The notes under the pieces: model-generated
What the model was told of the DNA's origin: nothing
The model's database searches: none
The model's input: only the letters and a program-made list of their open reading frames with translations
Source of the DNA: Rhodosorus marinus CCMP1338
Lineage: Eukaryota > Plantae > Rhodophyta
Direction of reading: 5' to 3'
Assembly (NCBI GenBank): GCA_029953675.1
Contig: JAMWBK010000004.1
Span: forward strand, 3,100,001 to 3,164,000
Length of the DNA stretch: 64,000 nucleotides
Part shown: in pieces, positions 22,297-53,383 of the stretch
Numbering within the stretch: the first letter of the stretch is position 1
How the letters are laid out: every line of letters begins with the position of its first letter
Made by a program: the position numbers and the translations under genes

Positions 22297-22620
22297 GGCT
22301 GTTATCTAATCTAATGCAAGGCAAAATCGAAGGGCCTCTTCCAGTGGACCGAGAGAACATTGCCGGAAGAATATCTCCAAACGCAACTTAGTATTGCCAA
22401 ATCAGCTCAGCAGTTTAGCACTTCATACAAGACTAATAATTGTCGTCATCGAACAGGGCTGTTATCTCATCTAATGCAAGGCAAAATCGAAGGGCCTCTT
22501 CCAGTGGACCGAGAGAACATTGCGCAGCCGGAAGAATATCTCCAAACGCAACTTAGTATTGCCAAATCAGCTCAGCAGTTTAGCACTTCATACAAGACTA
22601 ATAATTGTCGTCATCGAACA
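22297..22620. repeat. Tandem duplication of ~160 bp covering the last codons, stop and 3' flank of the ABC-F gene
   Basis: Copy 1 is 22297-22455 (159 bp) and copy 2 is 22457-22620 (164 bp). They are identical except one substitution (tatctAatc/tatctCatc) and a 5-nt indel (gcagc). Confidence 0.97.
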
Positions 22621-25039
22621 TATTGTGCGTCCCATTAATCAGACCGAGCTCAGCCATCTCCATGGCGAGTTGCTTTCTATATTCGTTGAAGTCTCCGTTG
22701 AATACTTCAACGGACCCCGGTTTTGAGCTTGTGCCTTTCGTACAAACCCAGATTTCCTCCGCGACGAGCGAGATTAGTCTTTCGTCGTGGCTAACAAGCA
22801 CAGCTCCTCCTTCAAAGCTGCGTTTCAGATAGGAGCAAGAGCGCGTTAGACTGATTGTAAAACAAGCCTCGACGGAAACCGCTCATATACACTGAAGGGC
22901 ACTACCGTTTCCGCAGTGAAATCTCAACTTACCGCATGATGGACCACGCGAGACTTTCAATGGTTTCAATGTCGAGATGATTTGTAGGTTCATCAAAAAG
23001 CATAATATGAGGTTGTTTGTAGGCCATCTCGGCGAAAGCCACACGCGATTTCTGTCCACCGGATAGAATTTTGATCGGCGTAATAGCTAGATTTCCGGAT
23101 AGTCCAAACTGGCCAAGGTGCTGCAGGTCCGCAGCGGCAACGTGATGCGCGTTAGTAAGCCTATCGAGCCAAATTGCGTACAGGGCGGAGCAATCACATC
23201 AACAACGAGCAAACGAAGTGGATCCCTGCTTACCCTCCTGAAGTTTCCCTCCGGGATGTCCGGCCACAATGATCTCATGTGCTGTAGAGGTGTTTTATTC
23301 AGATCCAACATGTCGACGTGGTGCTGTGAAAACTTCGCGAGACGCAGCTTTGGATGTCGAGAAATCCAGCCTTCGACTGGTAGGATCTCCCCATTCAGCA
23401 GTTTCAGCATTGTTGATTTTCCTGCTCCGTTTTTCCCCACGATTGCCACTCTCGAGTCCGTGTCAACACCAAAATTAACCTGCTCATAGAGAATCGGGCC
23501 CGTGGTGTATCCGAACGAAACCTCGGACACGGAAATGCATGGCGGGGGTAAATGCCCAGGATCTGGGAACTCGAGCCTCAAGTACGGATCATCATAGTCC
23601 ATATCTTCCATTCTACCCTCCAGTTTCGTAAGCATCTTCATTCTTGCTTGAGCCTGTCTGGCCATTTTCTTGTGCCCATTTCTGAACTTGCCGATGAAGT
23701 CTTGCAAATGCTTCTTCTGACGCATTTGATAATCATGCACAGCCGCTGCGTGTTTCCGATGCTCAGCACGGACACGGATGAACGTATCATAATTGCCACC
23801 GTAGTAAGTAAGCCTCTGCCGGTGCAGATGAATAGTGTCCTGAGTAACTTTGTTCAGAAAGCCGCGGTCATGCGACACAATAATAACCGTGCGTTCCCAC
23901 TCAAGCAAGAACTCTTCCAACCAAGTCAATGCGACTACGTCAAGGTGATTGGTGGGTTCATCCAGCAAGAGCAAATCCGGTTCACAAAAAAGAGCCTGAG
24001 CTAGAGCTACCCGCATCCTCCAACCTCCAGAATACTCGTTGGTTGGCTTGTTCATCATCTCTTGATCGAAGCCTAAACCTGTGAGAATGGTGCTTGCTCT
24101 TGTTTCCGCCGCGTCCGAATCAATCTCTTGCAGCCTTAAGTACACTTCTTCCAGTTCCGTACCCGCGTCGCCCGACTTCTCATTGCTCAAGTCCTTCTCT
24201 TCTTTAAGCAACCACTCTCTTTCCTCGTCTCCCAGGAGCACGGTTTGCAGAACAGTTTTCTCTGTGCCCTAAGGTTTCGAAGAAAGCAGGAACACTTGAG
24301 AACTCTCTCCAGCCGATGTGGCCTTTTTAGGTCAGAAGAAGGACGTTTATATCCTCACCGCGCATTCCTGTTCCACGAATATAATATTAACATTTTCGGG
24401 GATGGGAATCTCCCTGTTGTACAACGCACGCAAGAGCGTGGACTTGCCTACTCCGTTTCGACCAATTAGACCGTATCTGGGGTGACAAGCAAAGAAGGAG
24501 GACCTCAGAACAACCGACGAGACCTGATTGCTGGCCAATTTGCAAAGCTTGCTCACTTTCTGCCGTACGCTAAAGTGAGCGTGCTGTTTCGTAAAATTTC
24601 AAGCTTTCCAACTTGGATATTGATCATTTCGCAGTGTAAATCCTTAACTATATGCGCGTTCTTTTCTCGAATCGGGCCGGACCGTGGTCGGAATCCCTGT
24701 TGCAAAGAAACAAACACAGACAAAGTCAGTATTGGTAATAACGTTAAGCACAACAAGAACCTAGGATTTGAAACAAGAAACAGGTTCAATAACTTCTCTC
24801 CTCAACAGGCAGCATCTTACCGCTTCTCTTTCCCTTTCCCGAATTCCGACTCTCCCGGCTTCCCCGCGGCCGTTTCCGTTTTCCAGACCATTTCCATCTC
24901 CATTCAGCTCACCAATTGCGCCGTTTTCTCCTCTTCCCTTCTCCTCCTCGAGCCTCTTGAGCTCAGCTTCTTTTCGCTTCTTCTCCTCTGCTTTCCTCTG
25001 TTTCTCGAGGAACTTCTTTGACTTGTTCGCTGGCGCCAT
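22598..25039 (-). CDS. Cytosolic ABC-F family ATPase (GCN20/ABCF3-like), multi-exon
   Basis: Two ABC domains and no transmembrane segments: [42 protein letters not shown], then [16 protein letters not shown] and LVSHDERLI. The N-terminus is Lys/Glu-rich. Confidence 0.93.
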
Positions 25040-43643: not shown

Positions 43644-44930
43644 TCATGATCCCCTCGCTAGGTGACCCTCCTCGTGCTTCTTTAAGTCCCATCTTTGGAA
43701 GAATCTGCGACCGCATTCAATACATTGATATTTCCTCTCACCCCTATGTACGGACAGGATGTGCCTGTTAACCTTCGACTGATTCTTGAATCCCTTTCCG
43801 CATTCTGGACACTCGGCAAGAGCAATCTTGTAGTGCACGGAGTAAATATGGTCCCGAAGATGTGTGCGGTGAATGAAATGTCTATTGCACATTTCACACT
43901 CAAAATTTCTTTCTTGTAGGTGTACAGTTCTAACATGCCTTCTGGTGTCGTGTTTCCGCGTAAACTGTGCCCCGCAGATAGGACATGTTAGATCATCCTC
44001 CGCCGCATCTGCACCAGTTCTCTTGCTGATAATCCTATCCACCGACCCATCGATCGACCCATCGGTCAGCAGCATCGGACTCCGCGGACCCGTCGCACAC
44101 ATCACTACAGACTGAGCATATTTGATACGCGCTGCCTCCGCAACGTACCCGTTTGGGGCATAATTATAAAATTTCGGAAAGGAGACGGCATGGTGCACCA
44201 TTTCCATACTACCCTCGCCTTCTGGAGTGGACATCACGCCGGTCACCTGGAACTTTCCCTGGAACACTCTACTGAAAACCTCGCAAAGCGCTCCGTTAAG
44301 GAAATGTAGATCCTGACTGTTCGAGAAGGAGACTCCCTGTATGATAGACTCACGGGTTATGTCGGTGAGGGATTTCGTCCTAATGTTATCCTCGCACTCG
44401 CATGTGAAGCCTTCCCTTGCACAATAGCTGCAGAGTTTTCGTTCTCTCGTTGTGAACCCAAAATAAACATTTGAGGGGTTGCTTTTCTCGTAAACATAGT
44501 TAGAACAGGTCATATCACCACTGGGTAGAAACTTGAACGTCATTAGTTCGACAAGACCACTAGAAGAACGATGACAAACGTTAGCAGTTATCGTAGAACC
44601 CCGGCTGTCCACTATGTACCTGCTCGTTGTACTGTGTTCGAGAGGAAACATTGCGCTAAGAATACTCCGCCCACCGAACAGCGTCCCGTACACAGCCCCG
44701 TTTCTCGCTGCCTGAGGAACAAACATAGGAGCCCAAGCCGTAATTGGAACGAGTAAATCGTCACCAGTCAATTTCATGTGATTTATTTGCAGCAGAGCTC
44801 CGCCCTCGAAGTCGAAGTTGGGGTCCGGCGCATCCCCATAAAGCCACGCTGACATCCCGTCGACTTGGAGACTCATATCCGCAAGAAGGCCTTCCATAGT
44901 CAATGAATTTCCAATCTCATGTTCGTCCAT
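43644..44930 (-). CDS. C2H2 zinc-finger protein, paralogue 1 (intronless; unrecognised N-terminal domain + 4 fingers)
   Basis: Single long ORF with four fingers: CPIC...HVRTVH, CEMC...HIYSVH, CPEC...HILSVH, CIEC...HEEGH. The N-terminal region aligns with the ORFs at 48117 and 50678. Confidence 0.92.
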   Translation of the reverse strand: MDEHEIGNSLTMEGLLADMSLQVDGMSAWLYGDAPDPNFDFEGGALLQINHMKLTGDDLLVPITAWAPMFVPQAARNGAVYGTLFGGRSILSAMFPLEHSTTSRYIVDSRGSTITANVCHRSSSGLVELMTFKFLPSGDMTCSNYVYEKSNPSNVYFGFTTRERKLCSYCAREGFTCECEDNIRTKSLTDITRESIIQGVSFSNSQDLHFLNGALCEVFSRVFQGKFQVTGVMSTPEGEGSMEMVHHAVSFPKFYNYAPNGYVAEAARIKYAQSVVMCATGPRSPMLLTDGSIDGSVDRIISKRTGADAAEDDLTCPICGAQFTRKHDTRRHVRTVHLQERNFECEMCNRHFIHRTHLRDHIYSVHYKIALAECPECGKGFKNQSKVNRHILSVHRGERKYQCIECGRRFFQRWDLKKHEEGHLARGS

Positions 44931-45477
44931 ATTCTGAAGTGTTAGCCCGAAAACGTCCGAAAGCGTTCCAAGCAAAGCGTTTCCAGCCCATATTCAAACT
45001 AGCTTCCCTCCCTGCTATGGTTGTCTCACAGAGTCCAAATACAAATGAGTCTACTGTCGCTCTACATGCCACACCCAAACTAGCCCTCGCAGGCGCCTGG
45101 GCTTCTCCCGACCCAACAATCCGGTTTCCTGCGGACTAGCCCGACCCCCACATATACCGCACCTCCATGAGTGAGGCATAGAGTGAGGCAAAGCGGAATT
45201 CTGCATTTTCTCCAGCCGGCATTCCGCTGATACCTCGGAACATTATAACATTAAAAAACACCAACACGTTTGGCCCCGAACTAACCTTGCTGAACAGGCT
45301 ACGAATTCGTGGTGCTTCGTTGTTTGCTCCAACGAGCGACTCCGTTAAGAGGCAGGGGATGTGGACCGCGAGGGGCGTATGGGCCGCGTCAGACAATGAG
45401 GGCGGGGGTATTGTTCTGAAGCGGTTCGCATGATCCGATAGACTTTTTTCAGCAGTGAAAGCCACGGGAATATAGTT

Positions 45478-45814
45478 AGGCCCGTGACCAACATGCCCGG
45501 AGCTTTTGAATGAATGCTCCTCGATTTCGAAATGAAATTAGGGCGCTGTGGAAGAGCGACTCACCACAAACCTCAAAGATAAATAAGGGATATCAGACGG
45601 TTCCTGCATGAGTTTACGGACGAGGGACTGGCCATGGAATACTTCAGGCCCGTGACTACCATGGTGGAAGCTGTCAAATGAATGCTCCTCGATTTCGGAA
45701 TGAATTTGCGACGCTGTCGAAGAGGCGACTCACCGCAAACCCCAAAGATGAGTAAGGGGTATGTTACGGTTCCTCCATGAGGTAGCGGACGAGGGACTGG
45801 CCATGGAATACTTC
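45478..45814. repeat. Diverged tandem duplication, two ~168-bp units
   Basis: Units start at 45478 and 45646 (aggcccgtgac...ggccatggaatacttc). About 28 differences over 169 aligned positions by manual alignment. Confidence 0.93.
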
Positions 45815-46671
45815 AGGGTTTTTTTTTGTGTTTTGACCGTTGATATCGGAATAGCTATACACCAAGAGACTGAATCTTCAAACAATAGCCACATTTCAAC
45901 CTCTAGGTACCAGTTTCCAGCAGATTCCGTAACAATCTTGGACGAACTTCTACTCAGCGAATCGCATACGGTCAACCATACCAGATATTATCCAATTCAA
46001 CAAACCTTTGCGCGCAGCCAAAGACCAGAAACCTCCATCAGGGGGCAGCTGACTCGAACTGGACTCATGAGCACCACTATCGGGCTGCTTCAGCCCCTCT
46101 TCACACTTGTCCTCGTCACTGAACACATCCACTATTGAGAAAAAAGCAAACCCAGCGCTATGAGGACATGTTCAATAGGAGGGTTCGAAGGCCCATGGAT
46201 TATGCACCCCACTGCTGTCCCCGCCCAAGTTGGCTCTCACATGGGTGTCGTTGTTGTCATCCTAATTCACACCCTAAAACGCTCTACTCTCTGGTTAATG
46301 CCTGCTCGAGCAACGCAAAATAAAAGGTTCTCCTTTGTTCGTTGCGCGATGGCACTGAACGCCTTCCACTGTGTGTTACTGAACAAGCAACTTCCCGAAG
46401 GTTCTGCCTAAGGGATGCTTCAGCGAACCCGGCGAAGCTGTAACAGTCGAATGATCCCAGTACAAGCGAGTCGCAGAAGATGATCTGCACCTGTGAGTTT
46501 TCAAAAGTCCGACCAGCTTCCTTGAGTCCAATATGCCGCGACCTCGGAACAAGGACAGAGCTCCGATCATGTCAAGGCGTTTTCTCTCACGCAAAAGAAA
46601 ACCTAAGTCTTTAAACCGATAACAGTACGTGAATTCCTCGAGCGTCGAAACATGACCGAAAATACATACAC

Positions 46672-46785
46672 CTAAGAGTCAAGCCTTTGTCTCTTGCGTC
46701 TATGCTGTCGCTTATCCTCATCGGATGAAGAACTCCATCCGTGCCTGCGAGCTCCTTCTTCTTCATGCTTCTGCCGTTCGCGCTC

Positions 46786-46816
<31 letters not shown>

Positions 46817-47235
46817 CTCTTCTTCTTTTCGGATTCCTTATGCTTTCTCCTGCCTTGGTCCTCATCCGGTACCTCGTGTGCGTCATTCTCAGCACTTGCC
46901 TCAATATCGTTTCCTGCCAGCTCACTCCGCATCGCTTCCTTCACCGCGTCTGTTGCAGTGGCACCCGACAGAGCCCGATTCATCATATCCGCTTCCCTTT
47001 TTTTCACTGCCAGCAGCTCTTCTTTCCGCTTGAGCGCTATTTCCTCTTTGGAAGTGCCCTTGTTTTTCGCATACCATTGCAGGTCCTTTCCCTCTTGCCA
47101 CCTGCCGACCGGAGCATTGAGCGAATGGCCAAGATAATTCTCCCTGTGCTTATCATTTTTCACTTCCTCCCAATCGAATTGGTCCCTCCCGCCCCTTGTT
47201 CCCCCTCTCCTACCAGCACTGCTCACTAAATCCAT
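46672..47235 (-). CDS. MMTAG2: Multiple myeloma tumour-associated protein 2 homolog (C1orf35 family), intronless
   Basis: RGGTRGGRDQFDWEEVKNDKHRENYLGHSLNAPVGRWQEGKDLQWYAK, followed by a Lys/Arg-rich tail. Confidence 0.92.
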
Positions 47236-48116
47236 CGCAGCCTCAGGCCAGCAACTTCGATCACCTCTCCGTCAAGTCCTTCGGAGAATCACCAGACGAA
47301 TCAGAAGGTCACCCACATTTACGCTTTGCTTGCCGAAGCGAACGCGAACACCAATCTCCGCAAAAAAACCCACGAAATCTGTTCTCTTGCAACAAGCAGT
47401 ATGCGTGTTGGTCGCTTCCTTCAACGTTGCCTAGGAGGCCTTTGTGCATAGACCTTCTAGCTAAAATCCACACACCCCTGCTGTCCGGACTAAAGGAAGC
47501 TGAACGAGTCACAAAAGGCTGAAGCGCAGCTGGCGGTGCTCATTTACCAGAGAGAATGGGCGTGGGATGCGAATCTCGTGTAGAGGTGTTTCCACGAACA
47601 GAGTTTGGTGTTCGGGCGTTCGAGTTACGACCAGCCATCCGTCTGGCAACTGATGTCTCGGTTCGCACCACCCTCTGAAGTCTATCGACGTCTTTTCACA
47701 TAGAAGGGGCAGTCTGCAAGTGGTGCTGAAAGCCGAAAGCTGACGAGTGCGCTAAACCGGGTCTTTGTCACTTTCGTTAGCAAGTGTACCTTCTGATTCT
47801 TGATTGTCCTCGCACGCACTCTGACATCAAGATGCGTATTCTCCTTCTCGCTCGGACTCACCATCTGGAGAGCGTTGCGCTCGCAGAGCTGTGAAGATGG
47901 TATTATCCGTGGGTGGCAACCTCGTCTGGGTGTAGAATCCGTTCATCAACGTTTGCTCATAGCATCTAATTTCCCTTCGCTGAAGAATTCGAAAGCTGCC
48001 AATAACCAAGAAAACTGGTTTTTACATATTACTTTTCATAAAAACCACCAAAGATAAATAAGCGCTACAGCAGCATAGGGAAAAATGTAAGCCTTGACAT
48101 GCACAGGAGTAAATGA

Positions 48117-49379
48117 CTACCTCTGAGACTGATGCGTCTCACAGTGTTTCTTCAGATCCCATTTCTGGAAAAAGCTTCGGCCGCAAACTTCACAAGAATG
48201 CCGTTTCTGCTTCCTATGCACAGCGAGGACGTGCCTGTTCACTTTCGACCTGCTTACGAAACTTTTCCCGCACTCTGGACACAGCGCTTTGTTTAGCTTG
48301 TAGTGTACTGATGCAACGTGATCGCGCAAATGTGTCTTGTGCACAAATCGTCTTGAGCACAAGGAACACTCGTATTCCCGTTCCCCGACACGAAGCAACC
48401 TATAATGTATATCATCATCTTCTTTGCTCTGAAGCTTTGCCCCACACTCAGTGCGCGTAATGCTACCATCACCGTGGGCGAGGCGTGAATCGTTTGACTC
48501 CTTTCGTTTGGGGGAATCTGCATCCTCACTGCACCCGCTGCTGTCAGTCAAAAACAAAGCGGAATTGGGCGTGTGAGAAGAAATGTACATTTGGGCATGT
48601 CCTATTCTTGCGGTGTCCACGACTCTCCCAGAAGGCATAAAGCTATAGCTTTTCGGAAAATGACAGTGAGAGTGTATCAACTCGGTCGAGCCGAAATCCT
48701 TGCGCATAGCGAGGGTACCCCACAGTGAGTACTTCGTGCTGAAAAGTAAGGAGAATGCTTCAGCAATGCCTTCGCACATAGTAACATGATCGTTCGACTT
48801 CGAGAATGAGAGTCCTGTCCGCTGGTAACCGTGTTCCACGTCCGCAAGGGCTCGTATTCGCATCCCCTCGGAGCACTCGCACACAAAACCCCGCGAAGAG
48901 CAAAACGGACATAGTCTTTTTTCTCTCAATTGAAACTTGAAAAAGATTTCATCTGGATTGCTCTGCAGATAAACAGCATTTGAGCATTTTGTGTCGCCAA
49001 TTCCATCCAGTTGGACGCGCAACAGTTCTATGGACCCCGCTTCAGATCTGTGGCAAAAGTAGAGCGTCATAAATTCACCGCGGCAGTCAATACAATATCG
49101 GCTCGAGTTGCCGACTTCCATAGGGAAGACAGCGCTGAGCAAACTGCGACCGCCGAATACCGTCCCGAAAAGTACCCCGTCCTGAGCGTACTGGGGCACA
49201 AACAACGGAGTCCAGACATTCGCTGGAAGCTCCAAGTCGTCTGACCTAAGCTTCATTCGATTTGATTGTAGCAGTGAACCCCGCTCAAACCTAAAGGGAA
49301 GGTCTGGCACGTCACAATATAGCCATTGCATCATCATTTCGTCGGGAATCCATTGGTCAGGCCTGGTTTCCGGTTCCAT
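48117..49379 (-). CDS. C2H2 zinc-finger protein, paralogue 2 (intronless; 3 intact fingers + 1 degenerate)
   Basis: 420-aa ORF with the same N-terminal domain. Fingers CSLC, CPEC and CEVC are intact; the first finger lacks its first Cys and last His. Confidence 0.92.
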   Translation of the reverse strand: MEPETRPDQWIPDEMMMQWLYCDVPDLPFRFERGSLLQSNRMKLRSDDLELPANVWTPLFVPQYAQDGVLFGTVFGGRSLLSAVFPMEVGNSSRYCIDCRGEFMTLYFCHRSEAGSIELLRVQLDGIGDTKCSNAVYLQSNPDEIFFKFQLREKRLCPFCSSRGFVCECSEGMRIRALADVEHGYQRTGLSFSKSNDHVTMCEGIAEAFSLLFSTKYSLWGTLAMRKDFGSTELIHSHCHFPKSYSFMPSGRVVDTARIGHAQMYISSHTPNSALFLTDSSGCSEDADSPKRKESNDSRLAHGDGSITRTECGAKLQSKEDDDIHYRLLRVGEREYECSLCSRRFVHKTHLRDHVASVHYKLNKALCPECGKSFVSRSKVNRHVLAVHRKQKRHSCEVCGRSFFQKWDLKKHCETHQSQR

Positions 49380-50677
49380 TTTTAGCTTTCTACACCAAAG
49401 CCACCAGCAAATTTCTGCGCATTCTAGGACACTTGCGCCGGAACCATATTTAAAGCCCCTCGTTAATACTCAAAGTTCCTGCTACAAATGGACCAAGTAC
49501 AGACCCCACCCTTTTCATATCCACCTCAAAACGTCCGCTCGTAAAAGACCTCCCTCCTTAAGAAATTGCCTTTCGCTGACGGTTCGCTTTCCCTCGTGCT
49601 AAGCCAACTCAAAAAAATTTCACTCTACTCCGCTCCACTGTACGCTACTAGCTTTTGCGGCTAGACGCAGGGTTTGCAACTGCTACCGACACGGTGCGTT
49701 TAGATACTTTGGCTCATAACTGAAGAAAACCAACTCCACAACATTGTGAGACGGACAGACAAAAATAAATTTTCCAGAGAAATGGTTGGGTTTGCTTACG
49801 ACAGCCCAAAACAAGGAGCATTCAATCCAGATTGTTCCGAAATTGATTAGCTTAAGTTTCTCCAAAACCCTTTCCGACCTTTGGTCGCGAATCAATAAAA
49901 GCGAAGCCTGGGCGGAAACAATCCTATTTTCGCTCAAAGGGCTATAGACTATGTCCCCATTCGCCACCATCCAGCACCATTCTTGATCCAAACTCGATGA
50001 ACTCAATCGCTGTACTGGAGGATGCTCAGAGCTTCGGCTTATCCACACCTAACTATGATTTGTTTCTCAGCCCAGCTCCGGCAATAACTGAGCACGCACG
50101 AGGAGCCGGAGGAAAAAGCAAATGAGATTGTTGCAGAAGCGTAAGCTTGTAGGCTTTTCTGTTAACGGAAATTCTTTGTGCCCCGCAACCCTTTCATTGT
50201 AACGGATGGTAGTTGAGACTTCACCGCATTCTGAATTTGCTTCTCATCAGCAGTAGCTGCTGTGTTTACTTGGGCGTACGGGTCTGAAGCAACTACGCCA
50301 TGATGCGATCAACACCTTTTTCCAAAACAAATTGACCATAATAAGTCAATACGTGCTGCTTCCGCTTGTCAGAGCAAGGTTTTTTACAAAACGTGCGCTC
50401 GTTGCCGTGGGACAAGGACCTGGGAACCCAGGGTCGGGGACGAGCAAAGAGGTCGAGTGCTCAGCGAGATATTCAAAATCTATGTGCTTGGGAAACTGCG
50501 GATGAACAGGTGATGATTTAGCAAAGCACCGATCTCCGAGAATAGTATGGACCTCTGCGTAACCTTGGATTGCACTAGTACGGGTTTTGCGATTTACAGA
50601 CGACCAGTCCCATGCACACCTATGAAAGGGCCATACAGACGTAGGCAATGAAAAAAATGTGCATCAAGGTGTCATGA

Positions 50678-51934
50678 TTAGATACAGTGCTTTTGAGCAT
50701 GCTTCTTAAAGTCCCATCGCTGGGAGAAGGCCTTCCCACACACGCCGCAGGAGTACTGCTTCTGGTTCTTGTGCACTGAAAGAATATGCCTATTCACTTT
50801 CGACTTGCTGACAAAGCCTTTCCCACACTCAGGGCACGTCGCCGGGTTGAGCTTGTAATGAACCGAGGCGACGTGCTCCCGAAGATGAGTTCTGTGGACG
50901 AATCGTCGTGAGCACACTGAACATTGGAAGTTCCTCTCGCCGAGGTGAATAGAACGGTAGTGCCTCTCAGCATCGTGTTTCCGAGTAAACTGTGCTCCAC
51001 ACTCCGAGCACGAATTCATACCGTCAACGTCGATTAGCCTGGCAGAGTTGCTAGAGCTGTTTTGTCGGTCGGAAGCTCTGTCGCTAAGCGTGGCGCCGTC
51101 GGTCAAAAAAAGAGCAGAACTGGGAGTCTTCGAAGAAAAGTACATTTGAGCATGTGCAGATCTCGCAGCTCGCACGACACTACCGTCGCGGATACAGCCG
51201 TATTTCTTCGGAAATTGGATATGTCTGTAGGTCAACTTGTTCACCTCGAAATCCTCTCGTACTGCGATTCTGCCCTCTAGAGTGTACTTTGCTCTCAAGA
51301 GCTGGCTAAACGTGGTGCTCAGCATTGCGCTCAACATGACTTGATCGCTGCAGTTTGAGTATGACAGACCGCTTCTTTTGTATGGATGCATTACGTCCGC
51401 GAGTGCACGTGTTCGCATACTCTCAGTGCACTCGCAAACAAAACCGCGGGACGCGCAAAACAGACACAATCTCTTCTCTCGCACATCAAACTTAAAAAAG
51501 ACTTGTTCCGGATTGTTCTGGAGATAGACAGCATTTCTGCATCTGGTATCTCCTATATGGTTGAAATGCACGCTCATCAGCTCAACCGACCCGGCTACAG
51601 ACTTGTGGCAAACGTAAATTGTCATGAACTCCGCGCGGAAGTCAATGCAATATCTACTATATTTGCCAATCTGCAAGGGAAACACCGTGCTTAGCATCCC
51701 ACGTCCTCCGAAAAGCGTTCCGAAGAGGACCCCCTTCTCAGCGTACTGCGGGACAAACAACGGTGTCCACTCGCTAGGAAGCTCCAATGCGTTCTCTTCC
51801 CCCCAGGGTTTTAGCCTACTGTTTTCCAACAAAGTGCCCCGTTCAAATTTAAACGGTAGATCTGGGATATCACCGTAAAGCCACTGCATCATCTTTTCGT
51901 CTGGAATCCATTGGTCAGGTCTCGAGTCTGACAT
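50678..51934 (-). CDS. C2H2 zinc-finger protein, paralogue 3 (intronless; 4 fingers)
   Basis: Probable ATG at MSDSRPDQW, by alignment with paralogue 2. Fingers CSEC, CSVC, CPEC and CGVC. Confidence 0.92.
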   Translation of the reverse strand: MSDSRPDQWIPDEKMMQWLYGDIPDLPFKFERGTLLENSRLKPWGEENALELPSEWTPLFVPQYAEKGVLFGTLFGGRGMLSTVFPLQIGKYSRYCIDFRAEFMTIYVCHKSVAGSVELMSVHFNHIGDTRCRNAVYLQNNPEQVFFKFDVREKRLCLFCASRGFVCECTESMRTRALADVMHPYKRSGLSYSNCSDQVMLSAMLSTTFSQLLRAKYTLEGRIAVREDFEVNKLTYRHIQFPKKYGCIRDGSVVRAARSAHAQMYFSSKTPSSALFLTDGATLSDRASDRQNSSSNSARLIDVDGMNSCSECGAQFTRKHDAERHYRSIHLGERNFQCSVCSRRFVHRTHLREHVASVHYKLNPATCPECGKGFVSKSKVNRHILSVHKNQKQYSCGVCGKAFSQRWDFKKHAQKHCI

Positions 51935-53383
51935 ATCAACCACATTACCAGAGGGACCCCAGCAGTTCAGAATCACACAACGAATAACAATGAATCCACT
52001 CAATCATACATCAAACCTATGCAAGAAGAATCGACACTGCTTACGATGTGGTCATCCCTTCCACCATGACCCCAAACTTCCGTAAGAAGAAACCTTGACG
52101 AAGATGTACTAGGAACCTACCAATAAAAGAGGACTCATCCAGATGATTTTGCCTATTCGCCCGGGTGCCGTTAGGTATCACCAGAACCCAGCATCATCCG
52201 AGTTTGTAACTCCTGGCCAAACTAGAGAGCGTTTATTTCTTGGCTTCGCGATTGGCGGCATGGCTATACAACTGCTGAAGCTAACTAGAGAGTTGTCGAA
52301 CTCTTGCTTCTAAAAAAAACACACGGAGCAAGACCACAGGAGAAGTTGACGATTTACTGCACTTTCCTAGGGGGAAAATCTTGGGGTTCCGGGCCTGCTA
52401 CCAGTGCCCTGACAGCCGCTTGTGCAGTGCGGGTACTAGTTTCCTGCAACCGAAAGGTATTCAGCGACCCCGCCGTTGCCTACGTTCTTCTCGCGATTGG
52501 ACATTGTGTCATCGCAATCCGTGACTCGGCTAAGACAATTCGAGATTTGACGCGATCGTAGAAGGACCTGTCTGCATCCAAGAAACACCAAACTGCCGTG
52601 GTAGAATAGCTCGACATCCAAGGAGGTGCACATTGCATGCGTCCCCGACCTCGTGGTAGCCCCCAACAAAAAAAAAAAGTGTCTTCACGACACGTCCAAG
52701 GATTCCTAATTTTGGATTTATGGGCACAACTAGCGAGGCTCTCCAGCAAACGGCTCAGGTTACGTTGGCACCCTGTTCGAACACTGTTCTATACTGATCA
52801 AACGATCATCGTTCTATATTCCCTCACTTTGGGGGTCGCGGAAAGAGTTCTCACGAGTGCTTGCAACAATTCGGTTAATGCAATTGCGCTGCTAGTGCTA
52901 CATGCTGATCATAAGACAGGGGTTGACGCGCTCTGAGGATGCCTAGTATCGGCGTTCATCTGAAGGCCGAAAGCGATCAAGTCCAGAAATGCTCGGCGTA
53001 ATTCGAAGGTTCGTCCATTCAGCCTTGAGCGCAGCACCGAAGTCCCAGATTCATGACGGGAACTTGAAAAAAAAAATTTAATTCACTGAAACGCGCGCCG
53101 ATTCGAATATCATCAGCCAGAGTGGATTACGTTCTCGGTTTTCTTCTCAAAACCAGCTCCTGGCTACTGCTTCTCCCCTCAGTTCCAATGTCCCGGGTCT
53201 CCTCGACTTCGGAACAATAAGCGCTGGCCAGGGTGAACAAGGCTTTTGTAGAAGTAAAGGACTGATCTTCCCAGGAGAGGGTCTTTGTTAGCTCAACCGC
53301 TGCATTAGTAGCACTTAACATCTGCAACGTTCGTCTCTGAATTGACTACATAGCCTTGAAAGCAGATGACTACACAGAAAGTT

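What the first reader, a model, noticed from the sequence alone, without database searches (positions are those of the whole stretch)
43644..51934. Cluster of three C2H2 transcription-factor paralogues sharing an unrecognised ~300-aa N-terminal domain
Seen in sequence: three same-strand ORFs share an N-terminal region with conserved blocks WLYxDxPD, WxPxFVPQxAxxG, GTxFGGRxxLSxxFP, SRYxxDxR, CH[RK]S, GDxxCxNxVY, RExxLCxxCxxxGFxCEC and FPKxY...AR...AQ...LTD, followed by a C-terminal finger array. I cannot match this region to BTB, ZAD, SCAN, KRAB or any other family I know. Established: animal KRAB-, SCAN- and ZAD-ZNF families pair an effector domain with C2H2 arrays and expand in clusters, and C2H2 expansions are reported in red algae. 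Inference: this may be an independently evolved algal effector-domain/ZNF system with an unnamed domain.
Basis: partly seen in the sequence, partly recalled or inferred. Interest (0 to 1): 0.8.

Follow-up and report, generated by a model that had tools for sequence, protein, structure and literature searches.

The report
Red-algal zinc-finger family with unnamed domain
Three neighbouring genes of the red alga Rhodosorus marinus encode DNA-binding zinc-finger proteins that share a structured, probably zinc-binding, beta-barrel-like N-terminal domain matching no named domain; it is a real but small lineage-specific family, not a KRAB-like expanding system.

Summary
Three intronless minus-strand genes (zA 43644-44897, zB 48117-49379, zC 50678-51934) are paralogues. 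Each has a ~273-aa N-terminal domain, a ~30-aa linker and a C-terminal C2H2 array with 29-aa spacing. zA and zC have four fingers; zB has three plus a decayed first one.

The window is Rhodosorus marinus CCMP1338, contig JAMWBK010000004.1. The N-domain matches nothing in Pfam, PDB sequences, or Foldseek against PDB and BFVD. With a 12-sequence alignment, AlphaFold2 gives a confident model (pLDDT 79, pTM 0.81). It has about ten meander strands, a helical insert and a C-terminal helix. The insert carries an invariant CxxC-x6/7-CxC motif.

A profile search of 1.84 billion proteins found eight hits, all N-domain-plus-finger proteins. Named sources are Rhodosorus strains and, from a later search, Purpureofilum (both Stylonematophyceae). 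CCMP1338 has at least eight members in three tandem clusters.

The N-domain is under purifying selection (omega 0.17-0.40) and is mostly acidic. It diverges faster than the fingers, whose DNA-contact residues are nearly identical between clusters. That is the reverse of KRAB-ZNF evolution. My best reading is a non-DNA-binding regulatory module, for a partner or a ligand, on a conserved DNA-reading head. That role is inferred, not shown.

The parts
43644..44897 (-). Gene zA (417 aa from ATG 44897; stop 43644-46). The ORF extends to a TTG at 44975, but the gene call and the MMETSP0011 orthologue P0004 support a start near 44897.
44079..44897 (-). zA N-terminal unnamed domain (aa 1-273)
   Evidence: dN/dS 0.17 against the orthologue.
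44394..44432 (-). zA CxxC-x6-CxC motif (CSYCAREGFTCEC), a putative structural zinc site inside the N-domain
   Evidence: The four Cys are invariant in the 12-sequence alignment and present in every other member read.
43986..44078 (-). zA linker (31 aa, acidic, Ser/Thr-containing)
   Evidence: (dN/dS about 1.2)
43647..43985 (-). zA array of four C2H2 fingers, 29-aa spacing, pI 9.7
48117..49379 (-). Gene zB (420 aa; P0001)
48558..49379 (-). zB N-terminal unnamed domain (aa 1-274). This is the sequence modelled by AlphaFold2 (aa 1-282; pLDDT 79, pTM 0.81).
48873..48911 (-). zB CxxC-x6-CxC motif (CPFCSSRGFVCEC)
48456..48557 (-). zB linker (34 aa)
48120..48455 (-). zB finger region. Finger 1 is degenerate (first Cys, the Phe and the last His are lost); fingers 2-4 are intact.
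50678..51934 (-). Gene zC (418 aa from ATG 51934; P0002). The ORF extends to a TTG at 52003.
51113..51934 (-). zC N-terminal unnamed domain (aa 1-274)
51428..51466 (-). zC CxxC-x6-CxC motif (CLFCASRGFVCEC)
51011..51112 (-). zC linker (34 aa)
50681..51010 (-). zC array of four C2H2 fingers
46672..47235 (-). Not part of the family: an unrelated MMtag-domain gene lying between zA and zB
   Evidence: PF10159, E 3e-32

Best explanation
zA, zB and zC are one of at least three tandem clusters of a Stylonematophyceae-restricted family of sequence-specific C2H2 transcription factors.

Each protein has three parts:
- A ~273-aa folded N-terminal domain of a so-far unnamed type. It is predicted as an antiparallel meander of about ten strands (beta-barrel-like), with a helical insert held by a four-cysteine (CxxC-x6/7-CxC) zinc site and closed by a C-terminal helix.
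- A short acidic linker under relaxed or no constraint.
- A basic array of four canonical-spacing C2H2 fingers that should read about 12 bp of DNA.

Shown: the architecture, the fold confidence, purifying selection on both folded parts, the lack of any match to known domains, the lineage restriction, the tandem-cluster organisation, and transcription of orthologues.

Inferred: the fingers supply DNA targeting. Because their contact residues are almost the same in clusters 1 and 2, the paralogues probably recognise the same or very similar motifs. The mostly acidic N-domain does not bind DNA. It is the regulatory and diversifying module, either a docking or oligomerisation surface or a small-ligand-binding barrel. 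It would set when, or with which partner, each paralogue acts on a shared set of sites. Paralogues may compete for or co-occupy those sites.
For: Architecture and paralogy.

Source organism: one search gives GCA_029953675.1, and (PMC10250338) confirms it as the R. marinus CCMP1338 assembly.

No named domain: Pfam at E <= 10 on 8 N-domains and on the 3 full proteins. PDB profile searches gave best E values of 0.34 and 1.8.

Fold: AlphaFold2 with 12 sequences gives pLDDT 79 and pTM 0.81, with all five models at 73-79. Foldseek against PDB has no hit at E <= 1e-3. The weak hits are all up-and-down barrels: invasin beta-domain, PsbO, OlmO (TMt 0.42), nitrobindin At1g79260 (TMt 0.43) and avidins. 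Foldseek against BFVD gave nothing.

Zinc site: C157, C160, C167 and C169 are invariant in the 12-sequence alignment and present in every further member read.

Family census. The HMMER profile search of 1.84 billion representatives returned only 8 hits, all with the same N-domain-plus-finger architecture. Cluster 2 has three same-strand genes on contig 2. Cluster 3 has two genes on contig 4 at 2.79 Mb. A Purpureofilum member also exists.

Selection: N-domain omega 0.17 and 0.40, fingers 0.12 and 0.04, linker 1.2 and 0.53.

Divergence pattern: between clusters, N-domains are 15-27% identical and finger regions 29-57%. Contact residues in clusters 1 and 2 are F1 RHDR/RYER, F2 HTHD, F3 (N/S/T)(S/A)KR and F4 Q(W/S)DK.

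Charge: N-domain pI is 4.4-6.5 in 9 of 13 members, against about 9.7 for the fingers.

Expression: orthologues are present in the MMETSP0011 and MMETSP0315 transcriptomes.
Against: - No experiment or direct test bears on what the N-domain does.
- I could not inspect the model coordinates, so barrel closure, a cavity and the geometry of the four cysteines are unverified.
- zC, c3_445 and Purpureofilum P0017 have basic or near-neutral N-domains (pI 8.8, 9.0 and 7.6), so a nucleic-acid contact is not excluded for every member.
- No shared upstream motif was found among the family's own promoters, so there is no sign of autoregulation.
- Foldseek TM-scores to calycin-like barrels are below 0.5, so 'ligand-binding barrel' is only a topological hint.
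- AlphaFold DB, ESM Atlas and HHpred could not be searched. A remote known relative may exist.
- C2H2 fingers can also bind RNA or protein.
Confidence: 0.6

Rival explanations
1. Ligand-sensing reading. The N-domain is a calycin-like up-and-down barrel that binds a small hydrophobic or tetrapyrrole-type ligand in its lumen and allosterically gates DNA binding or activity. This is the logic of THAP4 (THAP finger plus nitrobindin barrel) or plant HD-START factors. It is a specific version of the best explanation.
For: The weak Foldseek neighbours are ligand-binding barrels: OlmO (probability 0.84, TMt 0.42), nitrobindin 2a13 (TMt 0.43), avidins and NanoLuc/FABP-like. Polar R94 and D98 are conserved two positions apart on the same face of one strand (R94 invariant, D98 in at least 90% of 12 sequences). 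Fast divergence of the N-domain with conserved fingers fits paralogues sensing different inputs.
Against: No hit reaches E <= 1e-3, and TM normalised by the query is at most 0.29. The cavity could not be inspected. No ligand-binding motif is known for this domain. THAP4 and HD-START are analogies drawn from general knowledge, not tested homology.
Confidence: 0.2
2. KRAB/SCAN/BTB-like reading. The N-domain is an effector or oligomerisation domain that recruits a co-repressor or co-activator, or makes homo- and hetero-dimers among paralogues, in an independently evolved effector-ZNF system.
For: It shares the overall layout of N-terminal non-DNA-binding domain, linker and C-terminal C2H2 array. 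The genes lie in tandem clusters. The domain is never found without fingers. The N-domain is mostly acidic and the linker is acidic.
Against: The evolutionary mode is the reverse of KRAB-ZNFs. Finger number and contact residues are conserved, and the supposed effector domain diverges to 15-27% identity. The family is small. A 273-aa zinc-containing barrel is far larger than the known effector modules of 40-120 aa. There is no sequence or fold match to KRAB, SCAN, BTB or ZAD.
Confidence: 0.25
3. Hidden known domain. The N-domain is a very divergent member of a characterised family, for example a p53/NDT80-like or other beta-rich DNA-binding domain, a PR/SET-like module as in PRDM proteins, or a transposase- or virus-derived domain. 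HMMER and Foldseek against PDB and BFVD would be too insensitive to recognise it.
For: AlphaFold DB and HHpred were not available. The profile used for the exhaustive search came from only four close sequences. The word-indexed search misses members of its own collection (against 26 and 28).
Against: Pfam at E <= 10 shows nothing consistent across 8 members. PDB profile searches with 4- and 8-sequence profiles are empty. A confident model has no PDB or BFVD neighbour. No relatives turned up in IMG/VR or JGI metagenome scans. Acidic charge argues against a second DNA-binding domain in most members.
Confidence: 0.15

Closest known systems
KRAB-, SCAN-, BTB/POZ- and ZAD-C2H2 zinc-finger families of animals
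   Same: An N-terminal non-finger domain, a flexible linker and a C-terminal tandem C2H2 array. The genes are amplified locally into same-strand tandem clusters. The accessory domain is lineage-specific.
   Different: There is no sequence or fold match. The N-domain is much larger (~273 aa), beta-rich and carries four invariant cysteines. The family is small (at least 8 genes per genome). Finger number and DNA-contact residues are conserved while the N-domain diverges, the opposite of KRAB-ZNF dynamics.
THAP4 (THAP zinc finger plus nitrobindin beta-barrel) and plant HD-ZIP III/IV (homeodomain plus START)
   Same: A DNA-binding module fused to a barrel- or grip-type domain able to hold a small ligand. 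Nitrobindin is among the weak structural neighbours.
   Different: This is only an analogy from general knowledge. TM-scores are 0.29 normalised by the query and 0.43 by the target. The domain order is reversed relative to THAP4. The domain is larger and has an inserted helical CxxC..CxC segment. Ligand binding is untested.
PRDM proteins (PR/SET domain plus C2H2 array)
   Same: A beta-rich N-terminal domain followed by C2H2 fingers. SET-family proteins also use Cys clusters (post-SET CxCx4C) for zinc.
   Different: No SET or PR hit in Pfam even at E <= 10. No SET-fold structure among the top 50 Foldseek hits. The NHSC-like CH[RK]S block is not conserved outside the window's clade.
Generic red-algal C2H2 transcription factors (the largest TF class in non-cyanidiophyte red algae)
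   Same: They share the DNA-binding class. C2H2 proteins make up 20-44% of predicted TFs in mesophilic red algae (PMC12567131; PMC8304369).
   Different: Those surveys classify by the finger only. They do not mention any N-terminal partner domain or this family.

Membership tests
C2H2 zinc-finger proteins (Pfam PF00096 / PF13465) | C-x2-C-x12-H-x3-5-H units scoring above Pfam's gathering threshold | tested here: met
   zf-C2H2 scores 54, 44.7 and 66.4 bits against a 25.2-bit cut-off, with 3-4 stretches per protein. A regular expression finds 4, 3 and 4 units at 29-aa spacing.
C2H2 zinc-finger proteins (tandem, DNA-reading type) | Canonical 7-residue inter-finger linkers (TGEKP-like), allowing contiguous triplet reading | tested here: met
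   All H-to-C linkers are 7 residues. Two of the three are GER/GEK-like (HLGERNFxC, HRGERKYxC). DNA binding itself was not tested.
KRAB-ZNF | KRAB A/B box (PF01352) N-terminal to the fingers | tested here: not met
   No Pfam hit on the N-terminal region at E <= 1 (full proteins) or E <= 10 (8 N-domains).
KRAB-ZNF (evolutionary behaviour) | A conserved effector domain with rapidly diversifying finger number and contact residues in large clusters | tested here: not met
   Fingers are 29-71% identical against 15-58% for N-domains. Contact residues are nearly identical in clusters 1 and 2. The array is fixed at four fingers.
SCAN-, BTB/POZ-, ZAD-ZNF | SCAN (PF02023), BTB (PF00651) or ZAD (PF07776) domain | tested here: not met
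   No Pfam hits. The predicted fold is beta-rich, not the helical SCAN fold or the alpha/beta BTB fold. No such structures appear among the top 50 Foldseek hits.
PRDM / SET | SET/PR domain signature (PF00856 and related) | tested here: not met
   No Pfam hit at E <= 10. No SET structures among the top 50 Foldseek hits.
Calycin-like barrels (lipocalin, FABP, avidin, nitrobindin, OlmO) | A closed 8-10-stranded up-and-down beta-barrel superposable on family members (TM > 0.5) | tested here: inconclusive
   These are the recurrent weak Foldseek neighbours, but the best E among them is 1.7e-2, TMq is at most 0.29 and TMt at most 0.46. The coordinates could not be inspected.
Calycin-like barrels | An internal ligand cavity or a bound ligand | not testable with these tools
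   No access to model coordinates and no experiment.
Fungal Zn2Cys6 / copper-fist Cys-rich DNA-binding modules (considered because of CxxC-x6-C) | The full six-Cys binuclear cluster pattern (PF00172) or the copper-fist pattern (PF00649) | tested here: not met
   Only four Cys are conserved. No Pfam hit at E <= 10.
The new family itself (Stylonematophyceae N-domain/C2H2 family) | N-domain with W19, G72, R94 and the invariant CxxC-x6/7-CxC (zB numbering), followed by C-terminal C2H2 fingers | tested here: met
   All three window proteins and all 14 other members examined carry these features.

The most novel reading that the evidence does not exclude
The N-domain is a previously unseen protein fold: a zinc-stapled ~10-stranded barrel with a helical insert. 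It would work as a ligand- or signal-sensing module wired directly to a C2H2 DNA-reading head. That would make the family a new class of one-component sensor transcription factor, invented within Stylonematophyceae, whose tandem paralogues read the same DNA motif but respond to different inputs.
Probability: 0.15. Interest if true: 0.65.

Novelty: new variant of a known kind. Interest (0 to 1): 0.42.

Why it matters
Red algae passed through a severe genome reduction, and C2H2 proteins are their largest transcription-factor class. Almost nothing is known about how these factors are regulated or what accessory domains they carry.

This family gives a concrete, well-bounded domain that is folded, under selection and probably zinc-binding. 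It has no named relative, so it could be deposited as a new domain family and used to annotate other Stylonematophyceae.

The pattern of conserved DNA-contact residues with a diverging accessory domain is the mirror image of the KRAB-ZNF paradigm. It suggests regulatory diversification by input rather than by target, which DAP-seq and domain swaps could test directly.

The scope is narrow, however: one small class of little-studied unicellular or filamentous algae, and lineage-specific unannotated domains are common in such genomes.

Tried and rejected
1. AlphaFold2 with only the four closest sequences gave pLDDT 46, and its Foldseek hits (p32, avidin) were meaningless. I replaced it with the 12-sequence model.
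2. PDB sequence-profile searches with 4- and 8-sequence profiles gave only chance hits: a Cas9 fragment at E 1.8 and a phosphodiesterase at E 0.34.
3. Foldseek against BFVD, to test a viral origin, gave nothing. An IMG/VR scan also gave nothing.
4. A JGI metagenome scan matched 136 patterns, none confirmed. The GTDB genome scan and the first metagenome attempt failed because the alignment was too divergent to derive patterns, so a bacterial origin was not tested that way.
5. I looked for a shared upstream k-mer among the eight family promoters, which would have suggested autoregulation. Nothing exceeded background.
6. I searched for more copies in the window and found none.
7. The CH[RK]S and GDxxC cysteines could have been extra zinc ligands or a SET-like NHSC motif. 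I rejected this because they are not conserved outside the zA/zB/zC clade.
8. A second DNA-binding domain is unlikely for most members because the N-domain is acidic.
9. tRNA and Rfam scans of the window were empty.
10. Literature searches for a description of the family found only generic C2H2 counts.
11. I did not try to predict the DNA motif from the recognition code and scan for it, judging it too speculative.

Full report
**Observation.** The mechanical ORF list shows three long minus-strand ORFs at 43644-44975, 48117-49379 and 50678-52003. The public gene calls for the same DNA start at the ATGs 44897, 49379 and 51934. They give proteins of 417, 420 and 418 aa, which I call zA, zB and zC. 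The finding's coordinates (43644-51934) are therefore exact. The three proteins align end to end. zA is 44% identical to zB and zC, and zB is 57-59% identical to zC, with tblastn E-values of 1e-118 to 1e-174. No further copy lies in the window. Pfam finds only C2H2-type finger models, all in the last ~110 residues. It finds nothing on the N-terminal ~300 residues, even at E <= 1. An unrelated MMtag-domain gene (46672-47235) sits between zA and zB, and a PAC3 gene flanks zA. The cluster is embedded among ordinary housekeeping genes such as Alg14, Na/Ca exchanger and L51_S25_CI-B8.

**Source.** zB is encoded on NCBI assembly GCA_029953675.1, contig JAMWBK010000004.1 (3.19 Mb). Lee et al. 2023 describe this as the chromosome-level nuclear genome of Rhodosorus marinus CCMP1338, a 31-Mb genome of the Stylonematophyceae (PMC10250338). 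From the coordinate mapping, the window is 3,100,001-3,164,000 of that contig, so the cluster lies about 40 kb from the contig end.

**Anatomy.** Each protein has three parts.
- The N-terminal domain is ~273 aa.
- The linker is 31-34 aa, acidic and contains Ser/Thr.
- The finger region is ~110 aa and basic (pI ~9.7). Its C2H2 units start every 29 residues, with 7-residue inter-finger linkers, two of them GER/GEK-like.

zA and zC have four intact fingers. In zB the first unit has lost its first Cys, the Phe and the last His, leaving three working fingers.

**Selection.** I compared zA with its orthologue in the MMETSP0011 Rhodosorus transcriptome. dN/dS is 0.17 for the N-domain, 0.12 for the fingers and about 1.2 for the linker. 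For a cluster-2 gene pair the values are 0.40, 0.04 and 0.53. Both folded parts are under purifying selection. The linker is under weak or no constraint.

**How widely the family occurs.**
- The word-indexed search of 5.8 billion proteins found, outside the window, only a truncated Rhodosorus transcript.
- The exhaustive HMMER profile search of 1.84 billion cluster representatives returned just eight proteins at E <= 1e-3. All of them have the N-domain followed by C2H2 fingers. All of the named ones are from R. marinus strains.
- Two further alignment-seeded searches added NDN08_002642 (P0013), its MMETSP0315 and JGI-transcriptome orthologues (P0015, P0016), a member from an unnamed Logan SRA assembly (P0014), and a member from Purpureofilum apyrenoidigerum, another stylonematophyte (P0017).
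- P0014's gene call lacks fingers, but tblastn shows they follow in the DNA.
- The JGI metagenome and IMG/VR scans found nothing.
- The word-indexed tool missed members that are in its own collection, so its negatives are weak (note 4). The exhaustive search used a profile built from only four close sequences. 'Restricted to Stylonematophyceae' is therefore well supported but not proven.

**Census in CCMP1338.** The genome holds at least eight members in three tandem clusters.
- Cluster 1 is the window's three genes.
- Cluster 2 is three same-strand genes of 496, 464 and 465 aa on contig 2 at 3.05-3.07 Mb.
- Cluster 3 is two genes on contig 4 at 2.79 Mb. One is 445 aa with only two fingers. 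The other is 434 aa and has one intron.

A neighbour-joining tree makes cluster 1 monophyletic (100% of 50 bootstraps). It places the MMETSP0011 orthologue next to zA. The zA/(zB,zC) duplications therefore predate the split of the Rhodosorus strains.

**The N-domain.** Across 12 diverse members the invariant positions are W19, G72, R94 and the four cysteines C157, C160, C167 and C169 (zB numbering). Nearly invariant are L20, G76, D98, G128, P142, Y245, G251 and P271. The CxxC-x6/7-CxC motif is present in all 17 members I examined.

Comparisons with known families gave nothing.
- Pfam on eight N-domains at E <= 10 shows no consistent hit.
- PDB profile searches are empty.
- AlphaFold2 with four close sequences failed, with pLDDT 46.
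- With the 12-sequence alignment it gave a consistent, confident model: pLDDT 79, pTM 0.81, five models at 73-79.

The model has short N-terminal helices and eight meander strands (residues 35-155). These are followed by a helical excursion (158-212) that begins at the Cys motif, two long strands (216-248) and a C-terminal helix (252-269).

Foldseek against 350,542 PDB chains gives no hit at E <= 1e-3. The weak neighbours are all up-and-down barrels: invasin beta-domain, PsbO, OlmO, nitrobindin, avidins and porin-like proteins. Their TM-scores are at most 0.29 normalised by the query and at most 0.46 normalised by the target. BFVD gives nothing. I could not inspect coordinates or search AlphaFold DB. 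On current evidence the domain is beta-barrel-like, probably zinc-stabilised, and has no named relative.

**How it probably works.** The fingers have the spacing and linkers of DNA-reading arrays. Their canonical contact positions (-1, 2, 3, 6) are almost the same in clusters 1 and 2: F1 RHDR/RYER, F2 HTHD, F3 (N/S/T)(S/A)KR and F4 Q(W/S)DK. Between clusters the finger regions keep 29-57% identity, but the N-domains keep only 15-27%. N-domains are mostly acidic, with pI 4.4-6.5 in 9 of 13 members. zC (8.8), c3_445 (9.0) and Purpureofilum P0017 (7.6) are exceptions.

From this I infer that the paralogues read similar DNA motifs, and that the N-domain is a non-DNA-binding regulatory module that has diversified. 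It could be a partner or oligomerisation surface, or a ligand-binding barrel. The weak neighbours hint at the second, by analogy with THAP4-nitrobindin and HD-START factors (general knowledge). Which of the two holds cannot be decided here. A look for a shared motif in the family's own promoters found nothing above background.

**Comparison with the known.** The layout and the clustering resemble KRAB-, SCAN-, BTB- and ZAD-ZNF families, but none of their defining domains is present. The evolutionary mode is reversed: the fingers are conserved and the accessory domain diverges. The family is also small. Surveys of red-algal transcription factors count C2H2 proteins as the largest class but describe no partner domain (PMC12567131; PMC8304369). 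UniProt and NCBI label the members only 'C2H2-type domain-containing' or 'hypothetical'.

**Verdict.** I rate it a new variant of a known kind, a C2H2 factor with a novel accessory domain. Interest is moderate, because lineage-specific unannotated domains are common in under-studied eukaryotes. The confident model without structural neighbours, and the inverted divergence pattern, are the points worth following up.

Noticed in passing
window 45478-45817: A ~169-bp unit is duplicated in tandem (81-87% identity). It lies 0.6-0.9 kb upstream of the zA start codon, between zA and the MMtag gene. A 32-bp partial third copy sits at 48036-48067, just downstream of zB.
   Followed up: no
window 22297-22620: A 165-bp unit is repeated twice in tandem at 96% match. 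It lies ~0.5 kb from the ABC-F-like ORF at 23087-24241.
   Followed up: no
window 48390-48455 (zB aa 309-330): The first finger of zB is degenerate (RTECGAKLQSKEDDDIHYRLLR): the first Cys, the Phe and the last His are replaced. zA and zC keep an intact finger at the same place. zB should therefore read one triplet fewer.
   Followed up: partly
window 46611-47235, both strands: The MMtag-domain gene (46672-47235, minus strand) ends in a K/R/E-rich low-complexity tail. That tail throws up several 100-160-aa overlapping ORFs on both strands, which are almost certainly not genes.
   Followed up: partly
whole window; contig JAMWBK010000004.1: The window maps to 3,100,001-3,164,000 of a 3,191,941-bp contig. 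The zinc-finger cluster therefore lies only ~40 kb from the contig end. The other two clusters (contig 2 at 3.05 of 3.48 Mb; contig 4 at 2.79 Mb) also lie in the distal part of their contigs.
   Followed up: no
L004 3707-5044 (JAMWBK010000004.1, about 2.789 Mb): A very divergent family member (445 aa) has no precomputed Pfam hit. It keeps the N-domain and the CxxC..CxC motif but has only one standard finger plus one C-x-C variant finger. It lies 5 kb upstream of NDN08_002642.
   Followed up: partly
L002 (Logan SRR22824290 contig, 3595 bp): The gene call for P0014 (409 aa) ends in an out-of-frame tail. tblastn shows the four-finger region continuing at 1659-2018, so the call misses an intron or a frameshift. 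The organism of this SRA run is unknown to me.
   Followed up: partly
tool behaviour (against 26 and 28): The word-indexed protein search failed to return several family members that are representatives in its own collection (P0005, P0010-P0012), even when they were part of the query alignment. Absence of hits from that tool is weak evidence.
   Followed up: yes
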